IMG/VR virus record: IMGVR_UViG_3300036770_003657
Location: 310,001 to 374,000 of that record
Strand: one strand, 5' to 3'
Length of the DNA stretch: 64,000 bases
Shown: one piece after another, positions 6,665 to 56,870 of the stretch
Layout of the letters: each line of letters starts with the position of its first letter
Numbering within the stretch: position 1 is the first letter of the stretch
The notes under the pieces: model-generated
Told to the model about the DNA's origin: nothing
The model's input: the letters and a program-made list of their open reading frames with translations, nothing else
Database searches by the model: none
Position numbers and translations under genes: made by a program

Positions 6665-7096
6665 TCAAATTATATATTCGTAATTTATGGTATCTACGTT
6701 TTCACGAAATATATTAGCACCATTTCTTAGATGAAACTTACGGGCCATTTCAGTTTTTGGACTAAGGGTTACAAATCTAGTGACTGTAGGATATAATTTT
6801 GGAATTTCGTCAACTACAGCAAATAATAACTTACTGGCCGCACCCGCACGATAACTCCATATGGTATAAAATATGGCAGTGGTGAGGGTTGTGTCATCTC
6901 TACTTAGATCTTCTACAGTTTGTGGAACAAAATTGTGTAGACTAACGCATATCATAGCCTCTAATTTTTCTTCAACTAGAGCACCTACAAATCTATTACG
7001 ACTAACACGGAAATCTATAGGAATGTCTGGACGTACTGGGTCATCTTTGATATATTCTAACAAAGGGTTATCTGTGTCCTTTATGAGATTTAACAT
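6665..7096 (-). CDS. Conserved phage protein, GNAT-like fold possible
   Basis: IFYTIWSYRAGAASKLL...VTLSPKTEMARKFHLRNGA. Confidence 0.5.
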   Translation of the reverse strand: MLNLIKDTDNPLLEYIKDDPVRPDIPIDFRVSRNRFVGALVEEKLEAMICVSLHNFVPQTVEDLSRDDTTLTTAIFYTIWSYRAGAASKLLFAVVDEIPKLYPTVTRFVTLSPKTEMARKFHLRNGANIFRENVDTINYEYII

Positions 7097-7139
7097 ATAG
7101 CTACTTTATTATATACATATTTATATAATAAATATTTAC

Positions 7140-7664
7140 ATGAATGATTATTACCAAAAAATTAATTGGAATTATGATAAAGAATTACTTCTAAATTTGG
7201 TCACAGAAGTAAATCATATAGGTATGATAAATTTACCTTTTCAATATGTTCGAAAAATAAAAAATACCCTTAAATTGTTCATTCATCCTTTTAGTATTTT
7301 GTATTTTAACATTGAAGAAAATGGCGTAGGAACTATTCATATAGATTATTTGAATAACATTAGTGATTGGGCACTTAATCTTCCTTTAACGGAGAATTTT
7401 GCAACAATGCATTGGTACACGCAAAATAAAAAAGATGTTGAATTTTATAACACCAGTGATAATTTTGCTGCCAGTCCTAGGCTAAATCAGGAAAATGCTA
7501 TTCAAATAGCAAGTTGTCAAATAAGTCAACCCTTAATTGTTAAAATAAATTATTGGCATAATGTAACTAATCAAACAAAAGATTTTACAAAGTTTATAAG
7601 TTTGAGATTTCTTAAAATAACATCAGATGAATTCTTATCAAGACAAAAAATAATTAAATTTTAA
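7140..7664 (+). CDS. Putative Fe(II)/2OG-oxygenase-like protein
   Basis: IHID...WALNLP...WHNV...SLRF. Confidence 0.5.
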   Translation: MNDYYQKINWNYDKELLLNLVTEVNHIGMINLPFQYVRKIKNTLKLFIHPFSILYFNIEENGVGTIHIDYLNNISDWALNLPLTENFATMHWYTQNKKDVEFYNTSDNFAASPRLNQENAIQIASCQISQPLIVKINYWHNVTNQTKDFTKFISLRFLKITSDEFLSRQKIIKF

Positions 7665-7675
7665 TAACTAATTTT

Positions 7676-7751
7676 TGGTGCCGCCTCGTGGGATCGAACC
7701 ACGTTCCTCGGTTCTTCAGACCGGTGCTATGACCACATCAGCTAAAGCGGC
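7676..7751 (-). tRNA. trnF: tRNA-Phe(GAA)
   Basis: Cloverleaf, loop CTGAAGA, CCA; C:A mismatch at top of anticodon stem. Confidence 0.9.
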
Positions 7752-7756
7752 ATATT

Positions 7757-7832
7757 TGGGGTAACCTATGAGGATCGAACTCATACTGTCTCGGTCACGA
7801 CGAGAGGTGCAGGCCACTACACTAAGGTCACC
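7757..7832 (-). tRNA. trnH: tRNA-His(GTG)
   Basis: G-1:C73 identity pair, loop TCGTGAC, CCA. Confidence 0.9.
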
Positions 7833-7838
7833 ATTAAC

Positions 7839-7913
7839 TGGTGCTGATAATAGGATTTGAACCTATGACTTCCATCTTACCAAGATGGCGATCTACCCCT
7901 GATCTATATCAGC
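7839..7913 (-). tRNA. trnT: tRNA-Thr(GGT)
   Basis: CCATC-TTGGTAA-GATGG, CCA. Confidence 0.92.
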
Positions 7914-7984
7914 AAGAAAGTTAGTTGTACAAAAGTATAGGTTTTGATCGAAACTTATCTAGTAAGTATACAAAAGGACTTACT

Positions 7985-8254
7985 ATGAGAGCACAAGACC
8001 TACTAAGAGATTATATAAACATTGTTGAAAAATGGGGCACGCCTACTACAGTCGCACCCAGCGAACGTGGCAAATATAAGGGCAAGAGTAAACAGGAACT
8101 ACAAAAAAGTTACAATTCTCTAAAAGCCAGTGGCCCACATAAAAAAGGATCAACAGAATATGGTCGTATGCGTGAACTAGCATTTGCCATACGTGCTAAA
8201 AGTGGATGGGGCAGTGTAAAGGGTGAAGGTAGTTATGAACAAGAGGAAGAATAA
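7985..8254 (+). CDS. Small basic phage protein (possible virion internal protein)
   Basis: SD AAAGGA before ATG 7985; MRAQDLLRDYINIVEKW... Confidence 0.6.
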   Translation: MRAQDLLRDYINIVEKWGTPTTVAPSERGKYKGKSKQELQKSYNSLKASGPHKKGSTEYGRMRELAFAIRAKSGWGSVKGEGSYEQEEE

Positions 8255-8257
8255 TTC

Positions 8258-8503
8258 TTGGATATAGAATTTATCTGCCTCTCAAAACTTGGTGTAGGAT
8301 CTGTTCTAGTAAGACATACGGATATTATTACTATGGAGCTTACTCCTATGGGATTCACTCGTATTGAATTTGGTTACGGTGAACATCTCATAGTGGAGGA
8401 AACACCTATTCAAATACTAAACAAGATTAGAGCAGCACAAGAACTCAGTGAGCAGTCTGTTGAATCAACAATTAAAGAACCTATTAATAAGGAGTCTAAA
8501 TAA
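8258..8503 (+). CDS. Small protein, FlbD-like fold possible
   Basis: DIITME.....TRIEF..GEHLIVEETPIQIL resembles the FlbD family pattern. Confidence 0.35.
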   Translation: MDIEFICLSKLGVGSVLVRHTDIITMELTPMGFTRIEFGYGEHLIVEETPIQILNKIRAAQELSEQSVESTIKEPINKESK

Positions 8504-9107
8504 TCTCTACACTAATTTTTTCTTTAGTTTTAGTAGGAAACAGTTGATTAGTTACATGATGCAGTCTTCTGCTTCTATCAGGATCACCAAATCCAATTCC
8601 CATTAATAAACTAGGACCGTTTGTCATTCCTAAAATTTGTTGTATCTGTGTTCCATCAAAACAGGCACAACAACCAGTTTTATAACCTAAAATATTACTG
8701 ATTAAATTAGCATAACCTGCCGCTATACCTATGGCCATGTCGCTATCTCTAGTTGAAGTAGCTTTGGAACCATTTTCATAAATATGGTTTTTTATTTTAT
8801 GTCTATCACTGGTTTCTATAGCCTCAAACACAAGTAAAAGATTAGCTAAAGTTTGACTGTTAGTTGTCCACTCTCCATTAGGTAACAAAAATCCTTCAGT
8901 AGTTGCATGTATAGATTCAATAATATTTCTATTTACTACAGCATAAACCTTATAAAAAGCATGATTTTGTTTACTGGGGCAATTAGATACAGCATGTATT
9001 ATAAGTTCTAAATCCTCTTGCGGAATATTTTTAGAAATGTCCCAATTACGCTGACAATGTTGACTTCTTATTATAGCTTTTTCAAGTTCTTGATGAGTAA
9101 TTTGCAT
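8496..9107 (-). CDS. Nitroreductase-family flavoprotein
   Basis: RSQHCQRNWD, CPSKQN, LLMGIGF. Confidence 0.8.
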   Translation of the reverse strand: MQITHQELEKAIIRSQHCQRNWDISKNIPQEDLELIIHAVSNCPSKQNHAFYKVYAVVNRNIIESIHATTEGFLLPNGEWTTNSQTLANLLLVFEAIETSDRHKIKNHIYENGSKATSTRDSDMAIGIAAGYANLISNILGYKTGCCACFDGTQIQQILGMTNGPSLLMGIGFGDPDRSRRLHHVTNQLFPTKTKEKISVEII

Positions 9108-9143
9108 AATATTGCTCCTAGTACATTATTTATACTAGAAATT

Positions 9144-9218
9144 TGGTGCCTCTTCTTGGGAACGATCCAAGGACCCCCACCTTATCAAGATGGTGCTCTA
9201 CCACTGAGCTAAAGAGGC
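9144..9218 (-). tRNA. trnI: tRNA-Ile(GAT)
   Basis: CCATC-TTGATAA-GGTGG, CCA; T-loop ATCGTTC. Confidence 0.88.
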
Positions 9219-9222
9219 ATAT

Positions 9223-9297
9223 TGGATGCGGAGGACGGATTCGAACCGCCGATCTCTAGGTTATGAGCCTAGTGAGTTTCCTCTTCTCTACCCCGCG
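9223..9297 (-). tRNA. trnM: tRNA-Met(CAT), initiator-like
   Basis: C1:A72 mismatch, loop CTCATAA, CCA. Confidence 0.85.
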
Positions 9298-9303
9298 ATT
9301 GTA

Positions 9304-9378
9304 TGGTGGACCGGCGGAGGATCGAACTCCGACTAAAGGCTTGCAAAGCCCCTGTGCTACCATTATCACTACCAGCCC
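9304..9378 (-). tRNA. trnA: tRNA-Ala(TGC)
   Basis: G3:U70, loop TTTGCAA, CCA. Confidence 0.92.
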
Positions 9379-9384
9379 ATTGTT

Positions 9385-9460
9385 TGGCTCCGGTCCAGGG
9401 ATTCGAACCCCGCTTCATGGATTAACAGTCCACCGCCTACACCTAGCTTGCTCGACCGGA
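9385..9460 (-). tRNA. trnN: tRNA-Asn(GTT)
   Basis: GTGGA-CTGTTAA-TCCAT, CCA. Confidence 0.92.
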
Positions 9461-9467
9461 ATATACT

Positions 9468-9559
9468 TGGTGGAAGGAGAGGGATTCGAACCCTCGGAGC
9501 AGGTTACCCCACTCGACAGATTAGCAATCTGCTGCCTTAAGCCTCTCAGCCATCCTTCC
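9468..9559 (-). tRNA. trnS: tRNA-Ser(GCT)
   Basis: Long variable arm, loop TTGCTAA, CCA. Confidence 0.93.
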
Positions 9560-9568
9560 TAATACTAC

Positions 9569-9652
9569 TGGTGCCCTGAGAGGGACTCGAACCCCCACAC
9601 CTTACGGCACTTGCTCCTAAGGCAAGCGTGTCTACCATTTCACCACCAGGGC
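9569..9652 (-). tRNA. trnL: tRNA-Leu(TAG)
   Basis: CTTGC-CTTAGGA-GCAAG, variable arm, CCA. Confidence 0.93.
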
Positions 9653-9659
9653 TACAACT

Positions 9660-9734
9660 TGGAGCAGGATATCGGATTCGAACCGATGACATTCTCGTTG
9701 GCAACGAGACATTCTACCCCTGAATTAATCCTGC
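9660..9734 (-). tRNA. trnG: tRNA-Gly(GCC)
   Basis: TCTCG-TTGCCAA-CGAGA, CCA. Confidence 0.93.
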
Positions 9735-9758
9735 ACTACACTACTTATATCTTGTCTA

Positions 9759-9848
9759 TGGTGGAAGCGGTGAGATTCGAACTCACGGACCGTTACCAGT
9801 CGTCTGTTTTCAAGACAGGTGCATTAAACCAGGCTCTGCCACACTTCC
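9759..9848 (-). tRNA. trnS: tRNA-Ser(TGA)
   Basis: Loop CTTGAAA, long variable arm, CCA. Confidence 0.93.
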
Positions 9849-9853
9849 TTATT

Positions 9854-9929
9854 TGGTAGCAATGGTCAGACTCGAACTGACGATAGGCACCGTATGAAGG
9901 TGCTGCATTAGCCACTATGCTACATTGCT
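9854..9929 (-). tRNA. trnM: tRNA with CAT anticodon (elongator Met or Ile2)
   Basis: GCACC-TTCATAC-GGTGC, paired 1:72, CCA. Confidence 0.85.
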
Positions 9930-9930
9930 G

Positions 9931-11226
9931 TTAATTATGTGATATAAACTTAAGACCTGCTTGAGCGGCTATTGCAGCCCAAGCATCATTATGATCTTCA
10001 TCTACTGAAAAAACTGCCGCCTTAGCATTAGTTTTTTGTAACTGGCTGTTGGCAAACCTAGCCCATTCTCTAGCAATTAATTTCCATACACCTTTATATT
10101 GGCCGCTTGATGCATTGTCCACCATAAGTTCAAGATATGGAGTCTGATCCTCCATATGGAATAGTGGAGTAACTACAAAACTACATTCCCAATTTGGATT
10201 GTCACGCATATTAAAAACATCAGGATCAAGTTCACTAAAACGAGTTTTAGGATCAGTTGTGGCCATTATCATTATATCCTCTCGCCTTATACGAATTGGC
10301 ACATTGGGATATAAACTGTTAAAGGAATTCTTAACAACCTTGGCCATATAGGCTGCGGCTTTTGGAGCCCAAGATCTCATCAATTCTTGTTCCCACTTTA
10401 ACCCTTGTTTTTGATCCATACCAGTTTGTTGAACATCTTCATCTAATTTATTATCAGAATCACTTGGAACTGTTACACCCATTGTGTTAACACGAATCTT
10501 TCCTTGTTCTACCTGATCAATTTGTGCTTGATTACCAAATGATAACGGATCCGTTATTACAAGTTGTGGTCCATATTTTGTTCTACGAAACATAAAATTA
10601 CCACCATTTAGATCTCTTTTATAACCACTTTTATAAAGATATCGTATGATATTGATTGCTTCTATCAATTGCGGATCTTTTATACTATTGCCTTTCTTAT
10701 CTTTATATTTAGGATCAAGTAAAGTTTGAGTTATAAGATAAACTAATTCTGACATTATAATAATACCTGGTCTCCCTACTGTATAGGGATATTGATCTTG
10801 GAGACTATTAAAATCAACATTCAATATTTTACTAAAAACCATAATCAATTCATCTGAGTCGAGGTCTCGCCAGTTACTTAACTTTTCTATGTCTAATTCA
10901 AAATATGGAGCACCTCTTTTAGGCTTTACTATATTGGCATTGTAGACCTGAGGTAGATAAGGATTATCGGTTTGATCCTTTAATGACATCAACTTATTAA
11001 TGTATGCGTAATAACCGTCTAATTTAGGCTTATTTTGATCAAATCTAGATACTTTCTTTGCTGTGCCAATACCCAATTCGCCTTCTGGTTGATCATAAAC
11101 TTTACCAAAATGTCCACTACCTAATTCAGGTTGTGTCTTGGATATTGCTGCCATTCGTTGCTTTTGAGTTGGGCCTTGTGTAACTGGAAGATCCTCACTG
11201 ATAATGTCTGTAATTTTCATAATCAT
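9931..11226 (-). CDS. Protein-kinase-like (Ser/Thr/Tyr or small-molecule) protein with extra C-terminal module
   Basis: Gly-rich loop LGSGHFGKVY, AKK, catalytic-loop-like RDLNGGN, ITDP at the DFG position. Confidence 0.7.
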   Translation of the reverse strand: MIMKITDIISEDLPVTQGPTQKQRMAAISKTQPELGSGHFGKVYDQPEGELGIGTAKKVSRFDQNKPKLDGYYAYINKLMSLKDQTDNPYLPQVYNANIVKPKRGAPYFELDIEKLSNWRDLDSDELIMVFSKILNVDFNSLQDQYPYTVGRPGIIIMSELVYLITQTLLDPKYKDKKGNSIKDPQLIEAINIIRYLYKSGYKRDLNGGNFMFRRTKYGPQLVITDPLSFGNQAQIDQVEQGKIRVNTMGVTVPSDSDNKLDEDVQQTGMDQKQGLKWEQELMRSWAPKAAAYMAKVVKNSFNSLYPNVPIRIRREDIMIMATTDPKTRFSELDPDVFNMRDNPNWECSFVVTPLFHMEDQTPYLELMVDNASSGQYKGVWKLIAREWARFANSQLQKTNAKAAVFSVDEDHNDAWAAIAAQAGLKFISHN

Positions 11227-11240
11227 ATTTAGTTAGGTTT

Positions 11241-11326
11241 ACCATATTGAAACACACTGATTGAACCTTTACCTCTTCCGAGTCCGTTCTTACCGTCAGG
11301 CGTTACACAATGTGCTTCAATATGGT
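11241..11326 (-). ncRNA. Long-stem hairpin RNA (family member 2)
   Basis: 16-bp stem ACCATATTGAAGCACA/TGTGTTTCAATATGGT (G:U on minus strand). Confidence 0.65.
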
Positions 11327-11449
11327 TGCCGGTTACAAAATCCGGCGTTACACTTTCGGAGTAACTGTTCTACCTATCCCGTCACCGACTTCGTTTAAGA
11401 CTCGCCGCCTTTATACACGCTGATGGCCACGTGTTCTGGTATTGCTACC
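11323..11449 (-). ncRNA. CCA-ending structured RNA with anticodon-stem-loop mimic
   Basis: Ends GCCGG-ATTTTGTAA-CCGGC-AACCA; internal GTTAC/GTAAC hairpin; not a cloverleaf. Confidence 0.5.
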
Positions 11450-11514
11450 ATATTTGAGCATACTACTCATCGGCTAGCCGCCATTTGTCTGTTCGGCAAT
11501 ATGCTCAAATATGG
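11448..11514 (-). ncRNA. Long-stem hairpin RNA (family member 3)
   Basis: Perfect 15-bp stem enclosing a core that is repeated at 12851-12889. Confidence 0.75.
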
Positions 11515-11586
11515 CAGGGGTACTCCGACTCGAACGGAGAAATGCGGGATCAAAACCCGGTGTTTTACCAATTAGACTATACCCCA
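11512..11586 (-). tRNA. trnQ: tRNA-Gln(TTG)
   Basis: Loop TTTTGAT, CCA. Confidence 0.92.
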
Positions 11587-11592
11587 ACTGAT

Positions 11593-11667
11593 TGGCGGTC
11601 CCAACGGGAATCGAACCCGTCCCTGCGGCGTGACAAGCCGCTATACTCACCGATATACTATGGAACC
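11593..11667 (-). tRNA. trnD: tRNA-Asp(GTC)
   Basis: GCGGC-TTGTCAC-GCCGC, CCA. Confidence 0.93.
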
Positions 11668-11672
11668 ATATT

Positions 11673-11746
11673 TGGCGTCCCTGCACGGATTCGAACCGCG
11701 ACTAAGAATTTTGGAGATTCACGTGCTACCGTTACACTACAGAGAC
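11673..11746 (-). tRNA. trnW: tRNA-Trp(CCA)
   Basis: Loop CTCCAAA, G73, CCA. Confidence 0.9.
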
Positions 11747-11753
11747 ATTGTTT

Positions 11754-11828
11754 TGGTGCTCTGTGAAGGACTTGAACCCTCATCGCCGGATTACAAAACC
11801 GGAATTCTAGCCTTTGAAATAACAGAGC
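11754..11828 (-). tRNA. trnT: tRNA-Thr(TGT)
   Basis: CCGGT-TTTGTAA-TCCGG (U:U at 31:39), CCA. Confidence 0.88.
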
Positions 11829-11833
11829 GTTGG

Positions 11834-11911
11834 TGGAGTTAGGAGTCGGATTCGAACCGACGGGTTGACAGTTTTGCAGACTGTTGCGTTGGGCCTCTCC
11901 GCCATCCTAAC
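11834..11911 (-). tRNA. trnC: tRNA-Cys(GCA)
   Basis: ACAGT-CTGCAAA-ACTGT, U73, CCA followed by a second CCA. Confidence 0.92.
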
Positions 11912-11914
11912 ATT

Positions 11915-11989
11915 TGGTACGGGCACTCGGGCTCGAACCGAGAACTTACTGGTTAAAAGCCAGTTACTCTACCTTTGAGTTATACCCGC
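11915..11989 (-). tRNA. trnK: tRNA-Lys(TTT)
   Basis: ACTGG-CTTTTAA-CCAGT, CCA. Confidence 0.93.
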
Positions 11990-12041
11990 AAAATAAAAAA
12001 CCCTTGGCAAAATCTATGACTTACCCAAAGGCCATAATTCT

Positions 12042-12116
12042 TGGTACACCCAACGGGAGTCGAACCCGTCTTTCCAGCTTGAAAGGCTAGCGTCCTAACC
12101 GATAGACGATGGGTGC
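12042..12116 (-). tRNA. trnE: tRNA-Glu(TTC)
   Basis: CTAGC-CTTTCAA-GCTGG, CCA. Confidence 0.93.
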
Positions 12117-12122
12117 TTTGTT

Positions 12123-12207
12123 TGGTGGAGAGCCAGGGACTCGAACCCCGTATGCCTGAGGCGTCGGATTTACAGTCCGATGCAGTAACCTGTTCTGCTC
12201 GCTCTCC
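12123..12207 (-). tRNA. trnY: tRNA-Tyr(GTA)
   Basis: TCGGA-CTGTAAA-TCCGA, variable arm, CCA. Confidence 0.93.
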
Positions 12208-12243
12208 GTATGTGTTTATAAATACTCCGAAGAGAACATCCCA

Positions 12244-12732
12244 CTAAATGTTCACATTTATGAATGGGTCTTCGTCCATTAATCCAATTGTTATTGCCTT
12301 TCTAACAGATGTTACATTTGCTACACTATGCAAAACATGCGTATTTAATATATGCCATCTGAAAGGTTCTATTTCTAATTTCATTATCGTTTCTAAATCA
12401 TCTATTGTCGGATGGCTGTATCTAGGACCAATATAAATATCTCTATTCTTGATACGATGCAGCCGTGTTACGACGTTTCCTCCTCTAGAAATAATATAGT
12501 TTAATCCCCAACGTCTGAAATCGCAGTGAGGAGCAACATTAGCTTCCATAACTTGACAGCCCATTCTGTCTTTTATAGGGCTAACATGTTTTACTAGCCA
12601 ATCTATAAGTTGTTCTGAAATGTTATATCTTGAGTAAACTCCATCTTTAAATCCTACTTTATCTGTGTAATAACAATCTACAAGAAGATTGGAGGGTATA
12701 TTAGGTAATTGATCCAAATAAGTAAAAAGCAT
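12244..12732 (-). CDS. Putative Fe(II)/2OG-oxygenase-like protein
   Basis: APHCD...WGLNYI...WHILNTHVLHSV...RKAIT; paralog of 1177-1761. Confidence 0.55.
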   Translation of the reverse strand: MLFTYLDQLPNIPSNLLVDCYYTDKVGFKDGVYSRYNISEQLIDWLVKHVSPIKDRMGCQVMEANVAPHCDFRRWGLNYIISRGGNVVTRLHRIKNRDIYIGPRYSHPTIDDLETIMKLEIEPFRWHILNTHVLHSVANVTSVRKAITIGLMDEDPFINVNI

Positions 12733-12776
12733 AATCTATTTATTTTAATAACAGATAATTTATCTTAAAAAAATTT

Positions 12777-12840
12777 TAACACACTCTAGCAGTTTATCTT
12801 TCTGCCCCATCTTACTAGGTAAGTGTGGACGAGTGTGTGT
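12777..12840 (-). ncRNA. Long-stem hairpin RNA (family member 4)
   Basis: ACACACTC/GAGTGTGT stem; inner GCAG-AAAGATAAA-CTGC and CTTAC-CTAG-TAAG. Confidence 0.5.
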
Positions 12841-12899
12841 AATAAAGCAGACTACTCATCGGCTCGCCGCCATTTGTCTGTTCGGCAATCTGCTTTATT
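12841..12899 (-). ncRNA. Long-stem hairpin RNA (family member 5)
   Basis: 11-bp stem AATAAAGCAGA/TCTGCTTTATT around the 39-nt repeated core. Confidence 0.75.
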
Positions 12900-12900
12900 A

Positions 12901-13018
12901 CTACTACCTTTTTACACATCCTAGTTACCGCCTAGGACTTATCATCCGGTAGTACGCCCTCGTTTGCCACATGTTTTAAGTGCATGGCAGGACCGCGTTC
13001 CCTATACACACTTTGCTA
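12901..13018 (-). ncRNA. Unassigned structured RNA directly after promoter P3
   Basis: Hairpins TGCCA..TGGCA (loop CACTTAAAA) and TCCTAG-GCGGTAA-CTAGGA. Confidence 0.45.
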
Positions 13019-13029
13019 TCTTAAACTGT

Positions 13030-13058
13030 ATTATATACAGTCTCCAGCATATTGTCAA
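13030..13058 (-). promoter_or_regulatory. Consensus sigma70 promoter P3
   Basis: TTGACA-17 nt-TATAAT; palindrome CTGTA-N5-TACAG spans the -10 box. Confidence 0.85.
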
Positions 13059-13088
13059 CTATTGCTTTGTTACTCTTTTACAACATCT

Positions 13089-13122
13089 AAAAAAAACCCC
13101 AAGGTGTTTAGTCCTGGGGTCC
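13089..13122 (-). terminator. Intrinsic terminator of attenuator
   Basis: CCCCAGG-ACTAAACA-CCTTGGGG followed by T8. Confidence 0.85.
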
Positions 13123-13157
13123 TTAAGTTGGATATACTACTATCCTACCGGGACCCC
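13116..13157 (-). promoter_or_regulatory. Antiterminator hairpin of attenuator
   Basis: GGGGTCC (inside leader ORF 3' end) pairs with GGACCCC (5' arm of terminator); inner GGATA/TATCC. Confidence 0.75.
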
Positions 13158-13255
13158 CGACAATCTGTATCATTAGCCTTAATCATTGACCAATAGGCTG
13201 GCATTGAGCCTGACTCATGGCGTTGACTAAAACTAAAATAATACTGGGATTTCAT
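13145..13255 (-). CDS. Attenuator leader peptide, 36 aa
   Basis: MKSQYYFSFSQRHESGSMPAYWSMIKANDTDCRGSR*; AAGGA SD-like upstream; below ORF-track cutoff. Confidence 0.75.
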   Translation of the reverse strand: MKSQYYFSFSQRHESGSMPAYWSMIKANDTDCRGSR

Positions 13256-13292
13256 TTAAACTTTATTTCCTTTGTTACTTACTATGCTTCAC

Positions 13293-13321
13293 ATTATACA
13301 CTTGCTAGTACAAGTTGTCAA
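13293..13321 (-). promoter_or_regulatory. Consensus sigma70 promoter P2
   Basis: TTGACA-17 nt-TATAAT; spacer contains inverted repeat ACTTG-N6-CAAGT. Confidence 0.88.
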
Positions 13322-13354
13322 CAACTTTTGGTGTTGTTTTTCTACTACATCTTG

Positions 13355-13362
13355 TATTTATA
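13355..13362 (-). promoter_or_regulatory. T4-like late promoter
   Basis: TATAAATA. Confidence 0.55.
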
Positions 13363-13383
13363 CAATTGCTTAATTCATATGCT

Positions 13384-13412
13384 ATTATATGGTGATTTCA
13401 TTGACCTGTCAA
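13384..13412 (-). promoter_or_regulatory. Consensus sigma70 promoter P1
   Basis: TTGACA-17 nt-TATAAT. Confidence 0.85.
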
Positions 13413-13708
13413 CTATGTTTGAGCATCCAGAACAGAGCCTCACCTTTTTTCCAAAAACCAAAATACCATTCTTGCCTTGTGTCTCGTTGTAGGAAGAATG
13501 CTTCCACCTTACCGTTGGCTCTATGTACTTTGTTATTCATTTCTTCCCACCAATCTGTTTTGTGTAGGAAGTCTGCGTTGAAATATTCGTGTGTCTTAAT
13601 TACTAGAATATCGGCTGGAGGATTGTTAGCATAAAGATTCTTAAACCTTTCTGCTTCGTAGTAAGGTATATGACCTTCTAACCAATCCTGCCAAGCCAAT
13701 ATTTGCAT
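13409..13708 (-). CDS. Hypothetical protein
   Basis: 99-aa ORF in operon with rbr/DUF3501. Confidence 0.6.
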   Translation of the reverse strand: MQILAWQDWLEGHIPYYEAERFKNLYANNPPADILVIKTHEYFNADFLHKTDWWEEMNNKVHRANGKVEAFFLQRDTRQEWYFGFWKKGEALFWMLKHS

Positions 13709-13715
13709 TCATTAT

Positions 13716-14294
13716 TTAAGCAAAGTCTTTAACTAATTCGTTTCTAACTTCATCTTTAAGTTGAATTTCATAAGGATAAAGATCATGCCCAATCCCTAGG
13801 TATACTTTATTGGCGGAATCCTTAAAATCTATGATTTCACCAGGTTTAAGTTCAAACCTAAGAAAATGAACCGCACTCGTTTTGGAATCTGTGCTACGTT
13901 CGAGATCTTCATCTGCAATTGCATATATACGCTGATGTCCTTGGATTCTTAAAAATACTGTATCTTCAATATTTTTAAGTTGTTCCAATTTCACTTTACG
14001 TAGATCAGGATCCCCGTATTCCAAAGTCATAGTGGCAATAAGATTCATACCGTTTGGTATTAAAGGATTATAAGCATCTAGTTCATCCTTGATACCATTA
14101 GTTGTAAATGTACGCTCAATGAACAACATTTCCTGAACTTGGTACTTTACAGTATCTCTATCTTCAAAAGCCAAAGTACAATTTGGTCCAATTGATACTT
14201 GACGTAGGCGACGATGATCTATAGCACTGCGTCTAAAGTCATCACGAACCTTACTATAATCTTCCAATGTCATTAAATCGTCTTGAGTTAACAT
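13716..14294 (-). CDS. DUF3501-family protein (rubrerythrin-associated)
   Basis: FEDRDTVKYQVQEMLFIER, ELDAYNPLIP, KTSAVHFLRFEL; follows rubrerythrin as in proteobacterial loci. Confidence 0.85.
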   Translation of the reverse strand: MLTQDDLMTLEDYSKVRDDFRRSAIDHRRLRQVSIGPNCTLAFEDRDTVKYQVQEMLFIERTFTTNGIKDELDAYNPLIPNGMNLIATMTLEYGDPDLRKVKLEQLKNIEDTVFLRIQGHQRIYAIADEDLERSTDSKTSAVHFLRFELKPGEIIDFKDSANKVYLGIGHDLYPYEIQLKDEVRNELVKDFA

Positions 14295-14305
14295 ATCTAA
14301 TCCTA

Positions 14306-14740
14306 TTATTGCTCTGCTTTAAATGCGTCAAGAGTTTTCTTGAACTTACCAGCGTGGCTACGTTCTGCCTTGGCCAATGTTTCAAACCAATCAGCAATCT
14401 CGTCAAAACCTTCATCACGAGCATCACGTGCCATACCTGGGTACATATCTGTGTACTCATGTGTTTCACCAGCAATGGCTGATTCAAGTGCTTCAACAAC
14501 TGTTTTAGCGCTCATACCAGTTTCTGGATCACCGCTTCCACCATTGATCAAATATTCCATATGACCGTGTGCATGACCAGTTTCACCTTCTGCTGTATGA
14601 CGGAAGATTGATGCTACATCTGGTGCACCTGCAATGTCTGCCATGTTTGCGAAATACAAGTATCTACGATTTGCTTTACTTTCACCTGTAAACGCATCCT
14701 TAAGATGCTGTTCTGTTTTACTACCTACTAGTTTAGTCAT
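14306..14740 (-). CDS. rbr: Rubrerythrin
   Basis: [41 protein letters not shown] diiron motifs. Confidence 0.92.
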
Positions 14741-14785
14741 TGTTTTCTCCTTGTGTGTATGACGTGTTTTATTGTACATTTATTT

Positions 14786-14815
14786 AATCTATTAATCAAG
14801 CGATTTTAATAGATT
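14786..14815. promoter_or_regulatory. Inverted repeat upstream of rbr (LysR/OxyR-like operator candidate)
   Basis: AATCTATTAA-N10-TTAATAGATT with CTAT/ATAG cores. Confidence 0.45.
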
Positions 14816-14842
14816 TTTTATGGTATTTTTTAATAAGGCTTA

Positions 14843-15655
14843 TTAAATTTTTTTATAAACAGCAATTACAGTATGCCCAATATCAAAGTTTATATTATGA
14901 TCTTTGATATCATATCTATTCTCATCAAGTAAACTACGATGAAAATCTGCTAGGGGTTCTTCGTATATTTCCACTTGTCTTAGGTCAAACAAGTTGGCAA
15001 TATTAGTCAAACATTGTTTGGTAAATCGTGTAACATGATGTGGAGGATAGTTTAGTGCCCAACCTTCTATATTGCCTAAAAAACCGTCTTCGTTTGGCAC
15101 ACTGAGTATGAGTATACCATTAACTTTTAAACAGCGTAGAGCATTGGATATAAAAGATCGTGTGTCATCTACATGTTCTAATACTTGGAATCCACATATT
15201 ACGTCATATAGGCCTTGATGTTCTTGTATGCTTTGTTTTATTACTTTCGGGTTTTGGCTGTAAGGATCTAGCCCAGTATAATCGGCTTCAACCATTTTAC
15301 CAAAGTAACCCTCTCCGCAGCCAATCTCCAGTATATTGTCATCTGATATGATGTATCTTTTGGCAAAGTCAAATTCTGGTTTGACCAATTGATAGTACCA
15401 AGGAAATGCCTGTAGTTGACTATAGAAGTTTGAACCACCCATAACAGGTGGTTTATAAAACCTAAGATCACAATCCATACATCTGTATAATTCTATATCA
15501 GAGGTAATATCTTCTGTGACATCAACTGGTGTATTATCAAACAAGGGATCTGTTTTATAAGCATTATGTATAAAATCACGGCTATACGTTTTATGTATAG
15601 CTGTGTTACTACTATGACATAAAGGACATTTTTTCATCTTTTTCCATATATTCAA
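14843..15655 (-). CDS. Class I SAM methyltransferase with N-terminal Zn-ribbon
   Basis: CPLC...CMDC, ILEIGCGEG, FQVLEHV, HHVTRF. Confidence 0.85.
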   Translation of the reverse strand: MNIWKKMKKCPLCHSSNTAIHKTYSRDFIHNAYKTDPLFDNTPVDVTEDITSDIELYRCMDCDLRFYKPPVMGGSNFYSQLQAFPWYYQLVKPEFDFAKRYIISDDNILEIGCGEGYFGKMVEADYTGLDPYSQNPKVIKQSIQEHQGLYDVICGFQVLEHVDDTRSFISNALRCLKVNGILILSVPNEDGFLGNIEGWALNYPPHHVTRFTKQCLTNIANLFDLRQVEIYEEPLADFHRSLLDENRYDIKDHNINFDIGHTVIAVYKKI

Positions 15656-19545: not shown

Positions 19546-19718
19546 TCTTCATCTCCAAAATCAGCGTTATCAATTTGCTCTTGCCAAAATGCACGAGCAT
19601 CCTTTTCGTTTTCAAAACTTTCCAAAACGTTCATACCACCCAAAGGATGAGGAAACCAAACTAACCAAATTTGGTCATCTTCATCATATGTACAATATAG
19701 TTCTACTGGATCTTCCAT
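19542..19718 (-). CDS. 58-aa highly acidic protein, leaderless, coupled to the R-M gene
   Basis: MEDPVELYC...DFGDEE*; TGA overlaps the ATG of 19545; TATAAT 6 nt upstream of ATG. Confidence 0.65.
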   Translation of the reverse strand: MEDPVELYCTYDEDDQIWLVWFPHPLGGMNVLESFENEKDARAFWQEQIDNADFGDEE

Positions 19719-19724
19719 GTTCGT

Positions 19725-19753
19725 ATTATAGTATAAGTCCTATATGTTGTCAA
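19725..19753 (-). promoter_or_regulatory. Consensus sigma70 promoter
   Basis: TTGACA-17-TATAAT. Confidence 0.85.
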
Positions 19754-19820
19754 GTGTTGCAATATTACTACACAATTTTTGATAAACTGTTTACAATTGT
19801 TTAACAATTTTCTTGACACA

Positions 19821-19849
19821 ATTATAGTAAATCTTGCTTTACATGTCAA
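19821..19849 (-). promoter_or_regulatory. Consensus sigma70 promoter
   Basis: TTGACA-17-TATAAT, inside inverted repeat TTCTTGACA...TGTCAAGAA. Confidence 0.8.
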
Positions 19850-24406: not shown

Positions 24407-25282
24407 TTAGAAACGATGTACTAGACCAATACCAAATTGGCTTTGATCTGCTGCATTTACCTTGCTGTCTACATTACGATATGCTACTACTAAGTCAGTA
24501 CGCTTGCTCAAATGATAGTCTGCACCAATAGCGTATGCGTCTACATCACGATTGGTACGACCATAACTGGCCTTTAATGTTACTGGACCACTGGTACGTG
24601 CAACACCAACTAGATCACCTTTATGTGCATAAGCACCCTTGTTATCACTATGGCTGTAGGTCACACTAAATCCAGCAACTTTAGTGGCTGCTGTCAATAC
24701 TGTGCTTTCCTCACTGCCTGCATCATAACGTGCTACTGCTGCCTGTACGGGACCAACACGACCACTGCCACTAACTACAGTGATTTCCTGTGCTAGGCCT
24801 TGTGTTTGAGTTAGCCCAAGGTTAATACCTTTAACTGGGGTAACTGTTAGATGTACGGCATCACTGACACGTAGTCCACGTAGGTTGTGAACATCACCAA
24901 CTAGTGAACCATATACTGCACCGAATACATCACTGTCTGCGATAGTATTGAATAAGCCGTGTGTGGCACGACCAAGGCTAACACCAGCAAAGTTATTGGC
25001 TACACCAACAGTCATTTGACGATCTCCTAGGCGTGTGCCTGGTGTACCAAATGTGTTGTCGCCAATGCTGGTTTCTACAACTGCTGTAGCAGTTAAGGCA
25101 CCAACCTTTTCTTTGGCTGTAATGTTAAGATTGTTTGTGGGCTCTGTTGCTGCGGCAGTAGTTGAACGTGATCCAACTTCTACGTTTTGTACATATGCAC
25201 CAACTTTACCACCTAATGTTACCTGTGCTTGTGCTGCACCGGCAACGGCCATCAACGCTACTGCAAGAATAGTTTTCTTCAT
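24407..25282 (-). CDS. Gram-negative outer-membrane porin (Burkholderiales type)
   Basis: Signal peptide MKKTILAVAL..AQAQVTL, YHLSKRT, C-terminal GLVHRF. Confidence 0.88.
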   Translation of the reverse strand: MKKTILAVALMAVAGAAQAQVTLGGKVGAYVQNVEVGSRSTTAAATEPTNNLNITAKEKVGALTATAVVETSIGDNTFGTPGTRLGDRQMTVGVANNFAGVSLGRATHGLFNTIADSDVFGAVYGSLVGDVHNLRGLRVSDAVHLTVTPVKGINLGLTQTQGLAQEITVVSGSGRVGPVQAAVARYDAGSEESTVLTAATKVAGFSVTYSHSDNKGAYAHKGDLVGVARTSGPVTLKASYGRTNRDVDAYAIGADYHLSKRTDLVVAYRNVDSKVNAADQSQFGIGLVHRF

Positions 25283-31771: not shown

Positions 31772-33649
31772 TTAGGCTGCGTTTTTAACTTCTGTAAAAT
31801 CTACATCCGTAATGTCCTTATCCTGTTGTTGAGGCTGTGCGTTTTTAGCAGTGTAAATAACCTGTGCCGCAGCAGCTAGGTCACTCATCTTCTGTGTTAT
31901 TGATTCCTTAGTACCTGTAGCAATCTCAGTTAATAGTGCTGTGATACTAGTTTCAATCTTATCTTTATCATCACTGCTAATCTTATCCTCAACTTCCTTC
32001 AAATCCTTACGAATTTGATGGACTTGTCCGTCTACGCTATTCCTTAAATCAACAATCTCACGCTGTTTGCGATCTTCCTCAGCGTTGGCTTCAGCTTCAC
32101 GGATCATTTTTTCAATTTGATCCTTACTTAAACCACCATCTGATTTAATAGTGATCTTGTTTTCTTTGCCTGTAGTCTTATCCTTGGCACTAATTTTCAT
32201 AATACCATTAGCATCTACATCAAAGGTTACTTCAATTTGAGGCATACCTCTGGGCTGTGGCATAATACCTTCTAGGTTAAACTCGCCTAGTAGTTTATTA
32301 TCCTTTACAAACTCACGTTCACCTTGGAATACCTTAATAGTGACAGCAGGTTGATTGTCATCTGCTGTGCTAAATGTTTGACTAGCCTTTGTGGGAATAG
32401 TAGTATTCTTTTGAATGATCTTGGTCATTACTCCACCAAGTGTTTCAATACCAAGACTCAATGGTGTAACATCTAATAACAATACGTCATTGCGTTCGCC
32501 GCTTAGTACAGCACCTTGTACAGCAGCACCCACTGCCACTGCTTCATCTGGGTTAACATCCTTACGTGGCGCTTTACCAAATAACTTTTCTACAGCGTCC
32601 TGTACCTTGGGCATACGTGTCATACCACCAACTAAAATAATTTCATCAATATCTGCTGGTGTAACTCCTGCGTCTTTCATAGCAGTACGACAGGGAGCAA
32701 TGCTACGTTCAATTAAATCTTCAACCAATGCTTCTAATTTAGCACGAGTAAGTTTTAGATTCATATGTTTTGGCCCGCTAGCATCAGCAGTAACATATGG
32801 TAGATTAATATCTGTTTGTTGGCTGCTACTTAATTCAATTTTAGCCTTTTCCGCTGCCTCTTTAAGACGTTGTAGAGCTAATACATCTTTAGTCAAGTCA
32901 ATACCTTGATCCATCTTAAAAGTATCAACTAAGTAATCCATAATACGTTGGTCGAAGTCTTCACCACCTAAGAAAGTATCACCATTAGTGCTTAGTACTT
33001 CAATTTGTTTGTCATTACCCAAGTTAGCAATTTCAATAATGCTAATATCAAAAGTGCCACCGCCCAAGTCATATACTGCTACCTTACGATCTTTTTTATC
33101 CGTCTTATCAACGCCGTAAGCCAACGCGGCAGCAGTCGGTTCATTAATGATGCGAAGAACTTCCAAGCCAGCAATACGGCCAGCATCTTTAGTAGCTTGA
33201 CGCTGACTATCATTAAAATAGGCCGGAACAGTAATAACAGCTTGGGTAACATCATAACCTAAATAATCTTCAGCAGTCTTTTTCATTTTACGCAATACTT
33301 CTGCGCTGATTTGAGGAGGTGCTAACTCCTTGCCCTGTGCCTTAACCCAAGCATCACCACTTGAGTTTTCAATGATTTCATAGGGCATTAGATCTAAATC
33401 TTTTTGTACAGCCTCTTCTTTAAACTTACGTCCAATTAAGCGTTTGGCTGCGTATACTGTATTCTTTGGATTAGTAACAGCTTGTCTTTTAGCACTGGCA
33501 CCTACAAGAATTTCTTCATCTGTATAGGCTACTATACTGGGAGTAGTACGTGCTCCTTCGCTGTTTTCAATTACTTTGGGATTGCCGCCTTCTATAATGG
33601 CGACGCAACTGTTAGTAGTACCGAGATCGATACCGATTACCTTACTCAT
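31772..33649 (-). CDS. dnaK: Chaperone DnaK (Hsp70)
   Basis: [43 protein letters not shown]. Confidence 0.98.
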
Positions 33650-56786: not shown

Positions 56787-56870
56787 TATTGTCTCCAACT
56801 GTAGTTTGGAGATAGCCTCCAAACCGCCCATAATAGTATTTATTAGGAACGATTTGGATAGTAAACTAGT

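What the first reader, a model, noticed from the sequence alone, without database searches (positions are those of the whole stretch)
13089..13321. Ribosome-sensing attenuator with a near-all-amino-acid leader peptide heading the phage tRNA operon
Seen on the minus strand: perfect TTGACA-17-TATAAT promoter, SD, then a 36-codon ORF (13255-13145) MKSQYYFSFSQRHESGSMPAYWSMIKANDTDCRGSR. It contains 18 of 20 amino acids (no Leu or Val) and 25 different codons. Its last codons (GGGGTCC) pair with the 5' arm (GGACCCC) of a downstream GC hairpin plus T8, so the two structures are mutually exclusive. Established: this is the geometry of trp/his-type attenuators, but those leaders are enriched in ONE amino acid. 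Inference: a ribosome reaching the stop masks the antiterminator and transcription ends. Stalling anywhere upstream (tRNA cleaved by an anticodon nuclease such as PrrC or PARIS, or general starvation) frees it and lets transcription enter the ncRNA/tRNA array. That would be a general translation-stress sensor inducing phage tRNAs on demand.
Basis: partly seen in the sequence, partly recalled or inferred. Interest (0 to 1): 0.95.

Follow-up and report, generated by a model that had tools for sequence, protein, structure and literature searches.

The report
Phage leader-ORF transcription attenuator candidate
A huge uncultured phage and its relatives carry, ahead of their tRNA genes, a strong promoter followed by a short reading frame and an RNA switch that probably stops transcription when the frame is fully translated and lets it continue when translation falters; this rests on sequence analysis only.

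Summary
The module is single-copy in the window. It is conserved in at least four lineages of related metagenomic phages (75-98% identity).

Findings in the relatives:
- The -35 and -10 hexamers and an AAAGGAAA motif are invariant, while the spacers vary.
- The short ORF stays open in all 18 distinct variants found (two are cut by contig ends): 36, 37 or 39 codons, ATG or GTG start, same stop position. Its amino acids evolve neutrally.
- The only two changes in the antiterminator arm are C-to-U opposite G.
- Most lineage-B variants and both lineage-C variants encode all 20 amino acids.
- In two lineages a real 51-52-aa gene starts 10 nt or fewer after the terminator's U-tract, so read-through must occur. 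The window's phage has lost that gene.

Folding with a ribosome mask gives the antiterminator unless the ribosome sits on the last codons.

My verdict is a probable ribosome-dependent attenuator (confidence about 0.5) and a new variant of a known kind. Induction of tRNAs on demand is only partly supported, because a conserved promoter, P3, lies downstream of the terminator. The main rival is a structured small RNA whose ORF is incidental.

The parts
13384..13412 (-). P1, perfect sigma-70 consensus promoter (TTGACA-17-TATAAT). Its transcripts run into the P2 leader.
   Evidence: The hexamers are invariant and the spacer varies in relatives.
13293..13321 (-). P2, perfect sigma-70 consensus promoter. 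The predicted transcription start is near 13286.
   Evidence: The hexamers are invariant and the 17-nt spacer varies in all lineages, including the 75% relatives.
13266..13276 (-). AACAAAGGAAA, a Shine-Dalgarno-like motif. A spacer of variable sequence (8-10 nt) separates AAAGGAAA from the start codon.
   Evidence: It is invariant in 16 aligned variants while both flanks vary. The GGA-to-start distance of 10-12 nt is longer than in the phage's real genes.
13145..13255 (-). Leader uORF of 36 codons plus a TAG stop. Its last codons, CGG GGG TCC CGG, are the 5' arm of the antiterminator.
   Evidence: It is open in all variants. pN/pS is about 1. The final codons are very rare in phage genes.
13167..13244 (-). 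Hairpin I, a long imperfect hairpin lying wholly inside the uORF (codons 4-30). Its role is unknown. A polymerase pause or another structural role is only a suggestion.
   Evidence: Folded up to 13165, the 5' part of the transcript has -28.4 kcal/mol, nearly all of it in this hairpin. Several pairs changed on both sides. The base helix is kept in lineage C through a two-base-pair insertion on both strands.
13111..13161 (-). Hairpin II, the antiterminator. GUC/GAC and GGGGUCC/GGACCCC form the outer stems, with an inner GGAUA/UAUCC hairpin.
   Evidence: -23.2 kcal/mol. The outer helix is 100% paired in 16 variants, and its only two changes are C-to-U opposite G. The inner stem covaries in lineage C.
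13089..13119 (-). Intrinsic terminator: CCCCAGG, a 9-nt loop, CUUGGGG, then U8. It shares CCCC with the antiterminator.
   Evidence: The core stem is -9.8 kcal/mol in the window and -12.5 in relatives, where the G.U pair is G-C. The U-tract is kept in all lineages.
13059..13088 (-). Remnant of the start of a 51-52-aa gene that follows the terminator in relatives. About 97 nt of it are deleted in the window.
   Evidence: Alignment with L049, L015, L016, L027, L038 and L044.
13030..13058 (-). P3, perfect consensus promoter downstream of the terminator. In relatives it lies inside the 3' end of the 51-52-aa gene and has a weaker -10.
12765..13023 (-). RNA B, a structured non-coding RNA of about 250 nt transcribed from P3. 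In relatives it runs straight into tRNA-Tyr.
   Evidence: -81 kcal/mol, z=-4.1. It is conserved in lineages A, B and C. No Rfam family matches. tRNA-Tyr abuts it in L011 and L044.
12244..12732 (-). 162-aa ORF inserted between RNA B and tRNA-Tyr, in the window's phage only.
   Evidence: It is absent at this place in relatives. Its only homologues sit in other contexts.
11512..12207 (-). First tRNA array (Tyr, Glu, Lys, Cys, Thr, Trp, Asp, Gln). Further arrays lie downstream on the same strand.

Best explanation
The element is the 5' leader of an early transcription unit of a family of huge phages, and it works as a ribosome-dependent transcription attenuator.

Proposed mechanism:
1. Host RNA polymerase starts at the consensus promoters P1 and P2.
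2. A ribosome loads at AAGGA/AUG and translates a 36-39-codon frame whose peptide has no function of its own.
3. The last five codons are themselves the 5' arm of a stable antiterminator hairpin.
4. If the ribosome is on those codons or on the stop codon when the polymerase reaches the U-tract, the 3' arm is free to form the terminator. A roughly 190-nt RNA is then released.
5. If no ribosome is there, the antiterminator forms and the polymerase reads on. This happens when the leader is untranslated or when the ribosome is held anywhere in about the first 25-29 codons.

What lies downstream:
- In the ancestral arrangement read-through enters a 51-52-aa gene, then RNA B and the tRNA array.
- In the window's phage that gene is deleted, so read-through only adds to transcription from P3.

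Status of the steps:
- Shown by sequence and comparison: the parts, their conservation, the mutual exclusion of the two helices, and the need for read-through in relatives.
- Inferred: translation of the leader, termination in vivo, and the coupling between the two.
For: - Parts and exclusion.
- Relatives at 75-98% identity keep the -35, -10 and AAAGGAAA invariant while the spacers vary.
- The uORF is open in all variants, with start and stop at the aligned positions: ATG/TAG in lineages A, B and D, GTG/TAA in lineage C.
- At least 35 substitution events in lineages A, B and D never disrupt the frame. P is 0.033 with random placement and 0.066 with positions fixed. There is also a 3-nt indel.
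- In lineage C the first half of the frame is rewritten yet stays open with a start codon (P about 0.04).
- The leader's pN/pS is about 1 and 8 of 35 events are synonymous against 8.5 expected. The neighbouring 99-aa gene has pN/pS 0.02-0.25 and the 52-aa gene 0.09-0.34. This fits a frame that matters only by being translated.
- The antiterminator's outer helix is 100% paired. Its only two changes are C-to-U opposite G.
- Hairpin I and the inner stem of hairpin II covary: 5 pairs changed on both sides against 1.3-2.0 in shuffles.
- Ribosome-mask folding was run in three lineages. The antiterminator has P 0.9-1.0 with no ribosome or with a ribosome at codons 5-25. The terminator has P 0.85-1.0 with the stop codon in the A site.
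- In lineages C and B2 an SD plus ATG of a gene under purifying selection begins 10 nt or fewer after the U-tract. That gene can only be transcribed through the terminator.
Against: - There is no experimental evidence of translation or of termination.
- The SD is short and 10-12 nt from the start. Lineage C uses GTG. A weakly translated leader would make a poor attenuator.
- The frame ends in codons almost unused by the phage (CGG 0.1 per 1000).
- Substitutions show no codon-position pattern. The whole leader evolves 4-5 times slower than synonymous sites of the neighbouring gene, as expected of a functional RNA.
- A 25-29-codon GTG frame in the neighbouring RNA B also stays open across lineages A, B and C. 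Open frames can therefore persist by chance in conserved RNA.
- The antiterminator and terminator stems are almost invariant, so true covariation is lacking for them.
- P3 makes the tRNA array independent of the switch.
- The evolutionary depth is small: four lineages, with signs of mosaicism.
Confidence: 0.5

Rival explanations
1. The roughly 190-nt P2 transcript is a stand-alone structured small RNA, acting in trans or as a protein-binding RNA. It has its own promoter and Rho-independent terminator. The ORF, and the overlap between hairpin II and the terminator, are incidental.
For: - The fold is exceptional (z=-6.6) and hairpin I is conserved and covarying.
- Constraint is equal at all codon positions and much stronger than at neutral sites.
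- The terminator loop and the AACAAAGGAAA motif are conserved, and either could be a seed.
- The frame ends in rare codons.
- RNA B next door also carries a persistently open frame.
- Attenuator RNAs that also act as sRNAs are known (rnTrpL, PMC6614838), so this reading and the best explanation could both hold.
Against: - The frame, start and stop are kept through at least 35 substitutions, a 3-nt indel and a rewritten first half.
- The antiterminator is more stable than the terminator, so naked RNA is predicted not to terminate. That is odd for a dedicated sRNA gene.
- In two lineages a protein gene starts 10 nt or fewer after the U-tract and needs read-through.
- No Rfam family matches.
Confidence: 0.27
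2. The antiterminator/terminator switch is real but is set by something other than the ribosome: a phage or host protein, an RNA (for example a tRNA), or a small molecule that binds hairpin I or II. Alternatively the hairpins are processing or stability sites (RNase III type) in early transcripts.
For: - Two mutually exclusive conserved folds exist.
- Hairpin I has no obvious role in a purely ribosomal model, yet its base is kept by compensatory change.
- The 3' domain is about 95% identical even in the 75% relatives. That is more than stems alone would require.
Against: - No known riboswitch or T-box model matches, even with lax thresholds.
- Conservation of the ORF, the start codon and the SD would be left unexplained.
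- The stop codon sits exactly at the 3' edge of the antiterminator arm in every lineage.
Confidence: 0.13
3. The ORF encodes a functional 36-39-aa protein, and the surrounding hairpins are ordinary mRNA structure.
For: The frame is conserved with an SD-like motif.
Against: - pN/pS is about 1, with 27 non-synonymous events against 8 synonymous, as expected at random.
- The first half is unrelated in lineage C.
- No homologue was found among 1.84 billion representative proteins. The only hits are spurious matches inside proteins of 812-1988 aa.
- The gene caller did not record it.
- Its final codons are very rare.
Confidence: 0.03

Closest known systems
Leader-peptide transcription attenuators of amino-acid operons (trp, his, leu, thr, pheA)
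   Same: Both have a promoter-proximal short ORF and an intrinsic terminator with a mutually exclusive antiterminator. In both, a ribosome that reaches the end of the leader favours termination and a ribosome held upstream favours read-through.
   Different: - There is no run of codons for one amino acid. The leader carries 18-20 different amino acids.
- There is no 1:2-type structure that enforces termination when the leader is untranslated, so the predicted default is read-through.
- The antiterminator's 5' arm lies inside the ORF rather than after it.
- The context is a phage, and the downstream genes are a small protein gene, an ncRNA and tRNAs rather than a biosynthetic operon.
uORF attenuators that sense general translation stress, such as B. 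subtilis vmlR (PMC9226507) and E. coli toiL-topAI (PMC12121999)
   Same: In both, a short uORF without a dedicated codon run reports ribosome stalling by re-pairing the leader RNA. toiL is described as a multipurpose uORF that responds to stalls at different positions.
   Different: - vmlR uses an anti-antiterminator and NusG-dependent pausing.
- toiL acts through ribosome-binding-site occlusion and Rho-dependent termination.
- Both control bacterial resistance or toxin genes.
- The phage element shares no sequence or Rfam relationship with them, and its response to any stress is untested.
Attenuator-derived small RNAs (rnTrpL of Sinorhizobium meliloti, PMC6614838)
   Same: In both, termination at the attenuator releases a discrete structured RNA that could act in trans. 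This would reconcile the attenuator reading with the sRNA reading.
   Different: No target or trans function can be inferred here. The phage RNA is much longer (about 190 nt) and contains a large extra hairpin.
Stable RNAs of unknown function encoded within phage tRNA gene clusters (T4 species 1 and 2 RNAs; from my own knowledge, not checked here)
   Same: Both are structured non-coding RNAs co-transcribed with a phage tRNA array. RNA B abuts tRNA-Tyr in relatives.
   Different: No sequence relationship was tested. This comparison concerns RNA B rather than the leader.

Membership tests
Ribosome-dependent (leader-peptide) transcription attenuator | Short ORF with a ribosome-binding site close to the promoter, maintained as an ORF | tested here: met
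   The ORF is open in all variants, with start and stop at the same places, and the AAAGGAAA motif is invariant. The SD spacing is long.
Ribosome-dependent (leader-peptide) transcription attenuator | The leader ORF is actually translated | not testable with these tools
   This needs toeprinting, Ribo-seq or reporter fusions.
Ribosome-dependent (leader-peptide) transcription attenuator | Intrinsic terminator between the leader and the regulated gene | tested here: met
   A 7-bp GC-rich stem plus U8. In lineages C and B2 the next gene's SD begins 1-4 nt, and its ATG 10 nt or fewer, after the U-tract. Termination activity itself was not tested.
Ribosome-dependent (leader-peptide) transcription attenuator | Antiterminator helix that excludes the terminator | tested here: met
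   The two helices share CCCC. The antiterminator is -23.2 kcal/mol and the terminator about -10 to -15. The helix is 100% paired in 16 variants, with two wobble-preserving changes.
Ribosome-dependent (leader-peptide) transcription attenuator | Ribosome position on the leader decides which helix forms | tested here: met
   Tested by modelling only. Masking a footprint at the stop codon gives the terminator (P 0.85-1.0). Masks at codons 5-25, or no mask, give the antiterminator (P 0.9-1.0). The same holds in three lineages.
trp/his-type amino-acid attenuator (narrow sense) | Run of codons for the regulating amino acid in the leader | tested here: not met
   The leader has 18-20 different amino acids. 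Ser is the commonest (7 of 36). The only tandem repeat is one YY pair.
trp/his-type amino-acid attenuator (narrow sense) | Anti-antiterminator (1:2) that gives termination when the leader is not translated | tested here: not met
   Without a ribosome the antiterminator forms with P about 1.0. Hairpin I does not compete with it.
Trans-acting small RNA with a Rho-independent terminator | Own promoter, discrete terminated transcript, and conservation at RNA level without codon periodicity | tested here: met
   The predicted naked-RNA fold disfavours the terminator by about 7 kcal/mol, which argues against efficient autonomous termination.
Trans-acting small RNA with a Rho-independent terminator | Base-pairing target or protein partner | not testable with these tools
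   The host is unknown and no transcriptome is available.
Any Rfam family (including T-box, known leaders, sok) | Score at or above the family's gathering threshold | tested here: not met
   Nothing but tRNAs at E<=1 in 7000-15000. With lax filters the best hit is sok at 22 bits against a gathering score of 59.

The most novel reading that the evidence does not exclude
The leader is selected to contain a codon for every amino acid. A shortage of any charged tRNA would then hold the ribosome upstream of the antiterminator. Such a shortage could come from starvation, from competition late in infection, or from cleavage by a host anticodon nuclease. Read-through would then raise transcription of the small downstream gene, RNA B and the phage's own tRNA array. 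This would be a universal tRNA-supply sensor wired to a tRNA operon.
Probability: 0.2. Interest if true: 0.9.

Novelty: new variant of a known kind. Interest (0 to 1): 0.66.

Why it matters
- Phage tRNA arrays are now known to counter host defences that cleave tRNAs (PMC11464382, PMC11555353). How phages control their expression is largely unexplored.
- My searches of the held literature found no description of a ribosome-sensing attenuator at the head of a phage tRNA region.
- A leader covering all amino acids would be a design principle distinct from classical single-amino-acid attenuators. It would be closer to the multipurpose stress-sensing uORFs recently described in bacteria.
- The element is compact (about 230 bp) and built on consensus sigma-70 signals, so it should be directly testable in laboratory E. 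coli without the uncultured phage.

Tried and rejected
- BLAST of the region against 50,697 GenBank phages, in near and distant modes, found nothing.
- The tRNA array and the kinase-like ORF found only distant phages.
- Three pattern scans of IMG/VR returned only the window's own contig.
- The genome-contig scan returned nine high-GC chance matches. None aligned to the region.
- The 162-aa downstream ORF has two relatives, in non-syntenic contexts.
- A covariance model of the 3' domain found no second copy in the window.
- The 10-bp pairing between codons 1-4 and the terminator's 3' arm (helix P0) is absent in lineage C, so I do not build on it.
- I found no evidence that selection maintains amino-acid diversity within lineage B. 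By my reading of the peptides, 2 of 13 distinct non-synonymous changes hit singleton residues, against about 27% expected. Lineages A and D lack Leu and Val.
- 28 of the 36 leader codons are readable by tRNAs encoded in the window. I computed no baseline, so no enrichment is claimed.
- The weak sok hit does not fit a type I toxin reading, because the peptide is hydrophilic.
- The 73-84-aa genes called across the terminator in some relatives look like gene-caller fusions of an out-of-frame stretch with the true 52-aa ORF.

Full report
**Source and setting.** The window is part of IMGVR_UViG_3300036770_003657, a 399,796-bp uncultured phage contig. It has 21 tRNA genes in minus-strand arrays. It also carries ribonucleotide reductase, an Hsp70, a porin-like gene and a 4109-aa ORF. 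GC content is 27-42%. No close relative exists among GenBank phages.

**Check of the observation.** On the minus strand three perfect TTGACA-17-TATAAT promoters stand in tandem. They are P1 at 13412-13384, P2 at 13321-13293 and P3 at 13058-13030. The window holds six perfect sites against 0.15 expected.

P2 is followed by these parts:
- AAGGA at 13272-13268;
- an ATG at 13255, opening a 36-codon ORF that ends with TAG at 13147-13145;
- GGGGUCC at 13157-13151;
- its exact complement GGACCCC at 13122-13116;
- a terminator of CCCCAGG, a 9-nt loop, CUUGGGG and U8, ending at 13089.

Taken alone, neither the ORF length (P=0.04) nor the count of 18 amino acids (P=0.06-0.13) is remarkable. The SD is also further from the ATG than in this phage's real genes.

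The RNA fold is remarkable: -68.1 kcal/mol with z=-6.6. It consists of three elements:
- a 78-nt hairpin I inside the ORF;
- hairpin II, the antiterminator, at -23.2 kcal/mol;
- the competing terminator, with a core stem of -9.8 kcal/mol.

Forcing the terminator costs about 7 kcal/mol.

**Finding relatives.** The 99-aa ORF just upstream (13708-13409) belongs to a 38-member cluster, and a second cluster is 74% identical to it. I fetched contigs through these proteins and through DUF3501 homologues. One metagenome pattern scan added more. Together these gave 18 distinct versions of the leader (two cut by contig ends), of which 16 were aligned:
- Lineage A: the window, L026 and L066, 96-98% identical.
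- Lineage D: L060, about 88%.
- Lineage B: about 88%, many variants.
- Lineage C: L044/L048 and L065, about 75%.

The same order holds everywhere: rubrerythrin, DUF3501, the 99-aa gene, P1, P2, the leader, P3, RNA B, then tRNA-Tyr and further tRNAs.

**Pattern of conservation.**
- The -35 and -10 hexamers of P1 and P2 are invariant while their spacers vary.
- AACAAAGGAAA is invariant in all 16 aligned variants. The 8-10 nt between AAAGGAAA and the start codon vary freely.
- The 3' domain, from GAUUGUCGGGGG to the U-tract, is about 92-95% identical even in lineage C.
- Synonymous sites of the neighbouring 99-aa gene differ by 0.27-0.61, with pN/pS 0.02-0.25. The leader ORF differs by only about 0.09 at synonymous sites and 0.08-0.13 at non-synonymous sites.

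The leader is therefore under strong selection at the nucleotide level, with no preference among codon positions. The 35 events fall 12, 15 and 8 on positions 1, 2 and 3. Eight are synonymous against 8.5 expected at random.

**Is the frame maintained?**
- In all 16 full-length variants the frame is open from the aligned start to the aligned stop, and it has no stop in the two cut ones. It has 36 codons in A and D, 37 in B and 39 in C.
- Lineage C starts with GTG directly after an in-frame TAA and ends with TAA instead of TAG.
- Within A, B and D at least 35 substitution events leave the frame intact. P is 0.033 if the events are placed at random, and 0.066 if positions are kept and the new base is random. 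The one indel is 3 nt long.
- In lineage C the first 20 codons are essentially rewritten. A shuffled version keeps a start codon and an open, in-phase frame in only 4% of trials.
- Multiplying these (0.033-0.066, one in three for the indel length, and 0.04) gives roughly 10^-3. This product is my own estimate, not a tool result.

One control tempers this. In RNA B a 34-codon ATG frame is broken in lineages B and C. A 25-29-codon GTG frame there stays open in A, B and C, though it has seen far fewer substitutions. The peptide search found no relatives, and the gene caller did not record the ORF. My reading is that the frame is probably kept because it is translated, not because of what it encodes.

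**Amino-acid coverage.**
- The window, L026, L066 and L060 have 18 amino acids (no Leu, no Val).
- L042, L064 and the truncated L018 have 19.
- Eight of the ten full-length lineage-B variants have all 20 in 37 codons.
- Both lineage-C variants have all 20 in 39 codons.
- A random frame of this length reaches 20 with P=0.001-0.007. None of 52 chance ORFs of similar length in the window exceeds 18.
- B and C share their C-terminal half. Given that half, the unrelated N-terminal halves supply all the missing residues with P=0.011 in B and P=0.02 in C.

It is not proof. Two lineages lack two residues, tip variants lose residues, and substitutions within B do not detectably avoid singleton residues (see Tried and rejected).

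**Structure.**
- On 14 sequences RNAalifold returns hairpin I, hairpin II and a long-range helix. On 16 sequences it returns the terminator conformer instead. Both folds therefore fit the alignment.
- For hairpins I and II, 96-97% of cells are paired. Five pairs changed on both sides, against 1.3-2.0 in shuffles and 1-2 in slid controls.
- The base of hairpin I is kept in lineage C by two extra base pairs inserted on both strands.
- The inner stem of hairpin II changes from GGAUA/UAUCC to GGUA/UACC.
- The antiterminator's outer helix shows only two changes among 16 variants. Both are C-to-U opposite G (L066 and L065).
- The terminator's one change is G.U in the window against G-C elsewhere.

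**Modelling the switch.** I masked a 28-nt ribosome footprint and folded the RNA available when the polymerase is in the U-tract. This was done for the window, L033 and L048.
- The antiterminator dominates (P 0.9-1.0) with no ribosome or with a ribosome at codons 5, 15 or 25.
- The terminator dominates (P 0.85-1.0) with the stop codon in the A site.
- With a ribosome at codon 30 the outcome differs by lineage. The window gives the terminator (antiterminator P 0.08, terminator P 0.84). L033 gives antiterminator P 0.70 and L048 gives 0.89.
- The last four codons, CGG GGG UCC CGG, are among the rarest in the phage's genes. Slow decoding there could hold the ribosome on the antiterminator arm. That is inference.

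**The decisive context.** In lineage C and in sublineage B2 the U-tract is followed within 1-4 nt by AGGAG or GGGAG, and an ATG lies 10 nt or fewer from the tract. This opens a 51-52-aa ORF. Examples are L049 2396-2554, and the genes called at L045 3641-3796 and L065 4226-4381.
- The ORF is under purifying selection within B2 (pN/pS 0.09-0.34).
- It has no recognisable family.
- There is no room for a promoter before it, so it must be transcribed through the terminator. The terminator is therefore leaky or regulated.
- P3 lies inside the 3' end of this ORF, with -10 TAAAAT or TACAAT.
- The window, L026, L066, L033 and L042 share a deletion of about 97 nt that removes the ORF. They have a consensus -10 at P3.
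- L061 has an extra HNH-like ORF inserted at the same spot.
- In relatives RNA B runs directly into tRNA-Tyr. The window alone has the 162-aa ORF and a T-run inserted there.

**Interpretation.** The best-supported reading is a ribosome-dependent attenuator whose default, untranslated state is read-through. It resembles the trp and his leaders in logic. It fails two of their defining features, the codon run and termination without translation. In concept it is closer to the uORF sensors of general translation stress, vmlR (PMC9226507) and toiL (PMC12121999).

The claim that it switches the tRNA array on when needed is weakened by P3, which is conserved in every lineage. At most, read-through from two consensus promoters would add to P3-driven transcription. 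In the ancestral arrangement the first regulated product is the small protein.

The main rival is a structured small RNA whose frame is incidental. The two readings are not exclusive, as the example of rnTrpL shows (PMC6614838).

**Limits.**
- All evidence is computational.
- The relatives span limited and partly mosaic diversity.
- The stems that matter most barely vary.
- The host is unknown.
- The literature searches cover only the held library.

Noticed in passing
window 12765-13023 (-); L011 3686-3947; L044 3801-3924: RNA B is a structured RNA of about 250 nt transcribed from P3 (-81 kcal/mol, z=-4.1). It is conserved in lineages A, B and C and has no Rfam match. In relatives it abuts tRNA-Tyr, so it is probably part of the tRNA precursor transcript. 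It contains a 25-29-codon GTG frame that stays open across lineages.
   Followed up: partly
L049 2396-2554; L045 3641-3796; L065 4226-4381; remnant at window 13059-13088: A 51-52-aa gene of unknown function sits immediately after the terminator in lineages C and B2 and is under purifying selection. P3 is embedded in its 3' end. It is deleted in the window and in some close relatives, so its presence is polymorphic.
   Followed up: partly
L061 4738-5121: A 127-aa ORF with CxxC and histidine motifs (HNH-like) is inserted between the terminator and the 52-aa gene. HNH genes also occur near the locus in L016, L044 and L066. This suggests homing-endonuclease traffic around the tRNA region.
   Followed up: no
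window 12244-12732 (-): The 162-aa ORF between RNA B and tRNA-Tyr is an insertion peculiar to this phage. Its only homologues (46-49% identity) lie in unrelated contexts.
   Followed up: partly
L012 about 530 onward: One relative is collinear through the 99-aa gene and P1 and then diverges completely into other genes. This marks a recombination junction just downstream of P1.
   Followed up: no
window 19716-19849 (-): Two more perfect consensus promoters stand in tandem here. The second has its -10 six nt before an ATG (19718), which suggests a leaderless mRNA for a roughly 58-aa ORF ahead of the 1144-aa methyltransferase-like gene.
   Followed up: no
window 9931-11226 (-): A 431-aa ORF sits between two tRNA arrays. 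It weakly matches the PHROG of the T7 gp0.7-type protein kinase and host-transcription inhibitor (E=1e-7).
   Followed up: no
window 13716-14779 (-): A DUF3501 gene and a rubrerythrin gene of bacterial type lie just upstream. DUF3501 identity among relatives (63-87%) does not track leader identity, which indicates mosaic genomes.
   Followed up: partly
window 44502-56831 (-), 24407-25282 (-), 31772-33649 (-): A 4109-aa ORF, a Gram-negative porin-like gene and a full-length Hsp70 are encoded by the phage.
   Followed up: no
window 13242-13251 with 13091-13103 (-): Codons 1-4 (GAAAUCCCAG) are 10-bp complementary to the terminator's 3' arm plus the first U residues. Variants in lineages A, B and D mostly keep the pairing (A-to-G, C-to-U), but lineage C lacks it. 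Its role is unexplained.
   Followed up: partly
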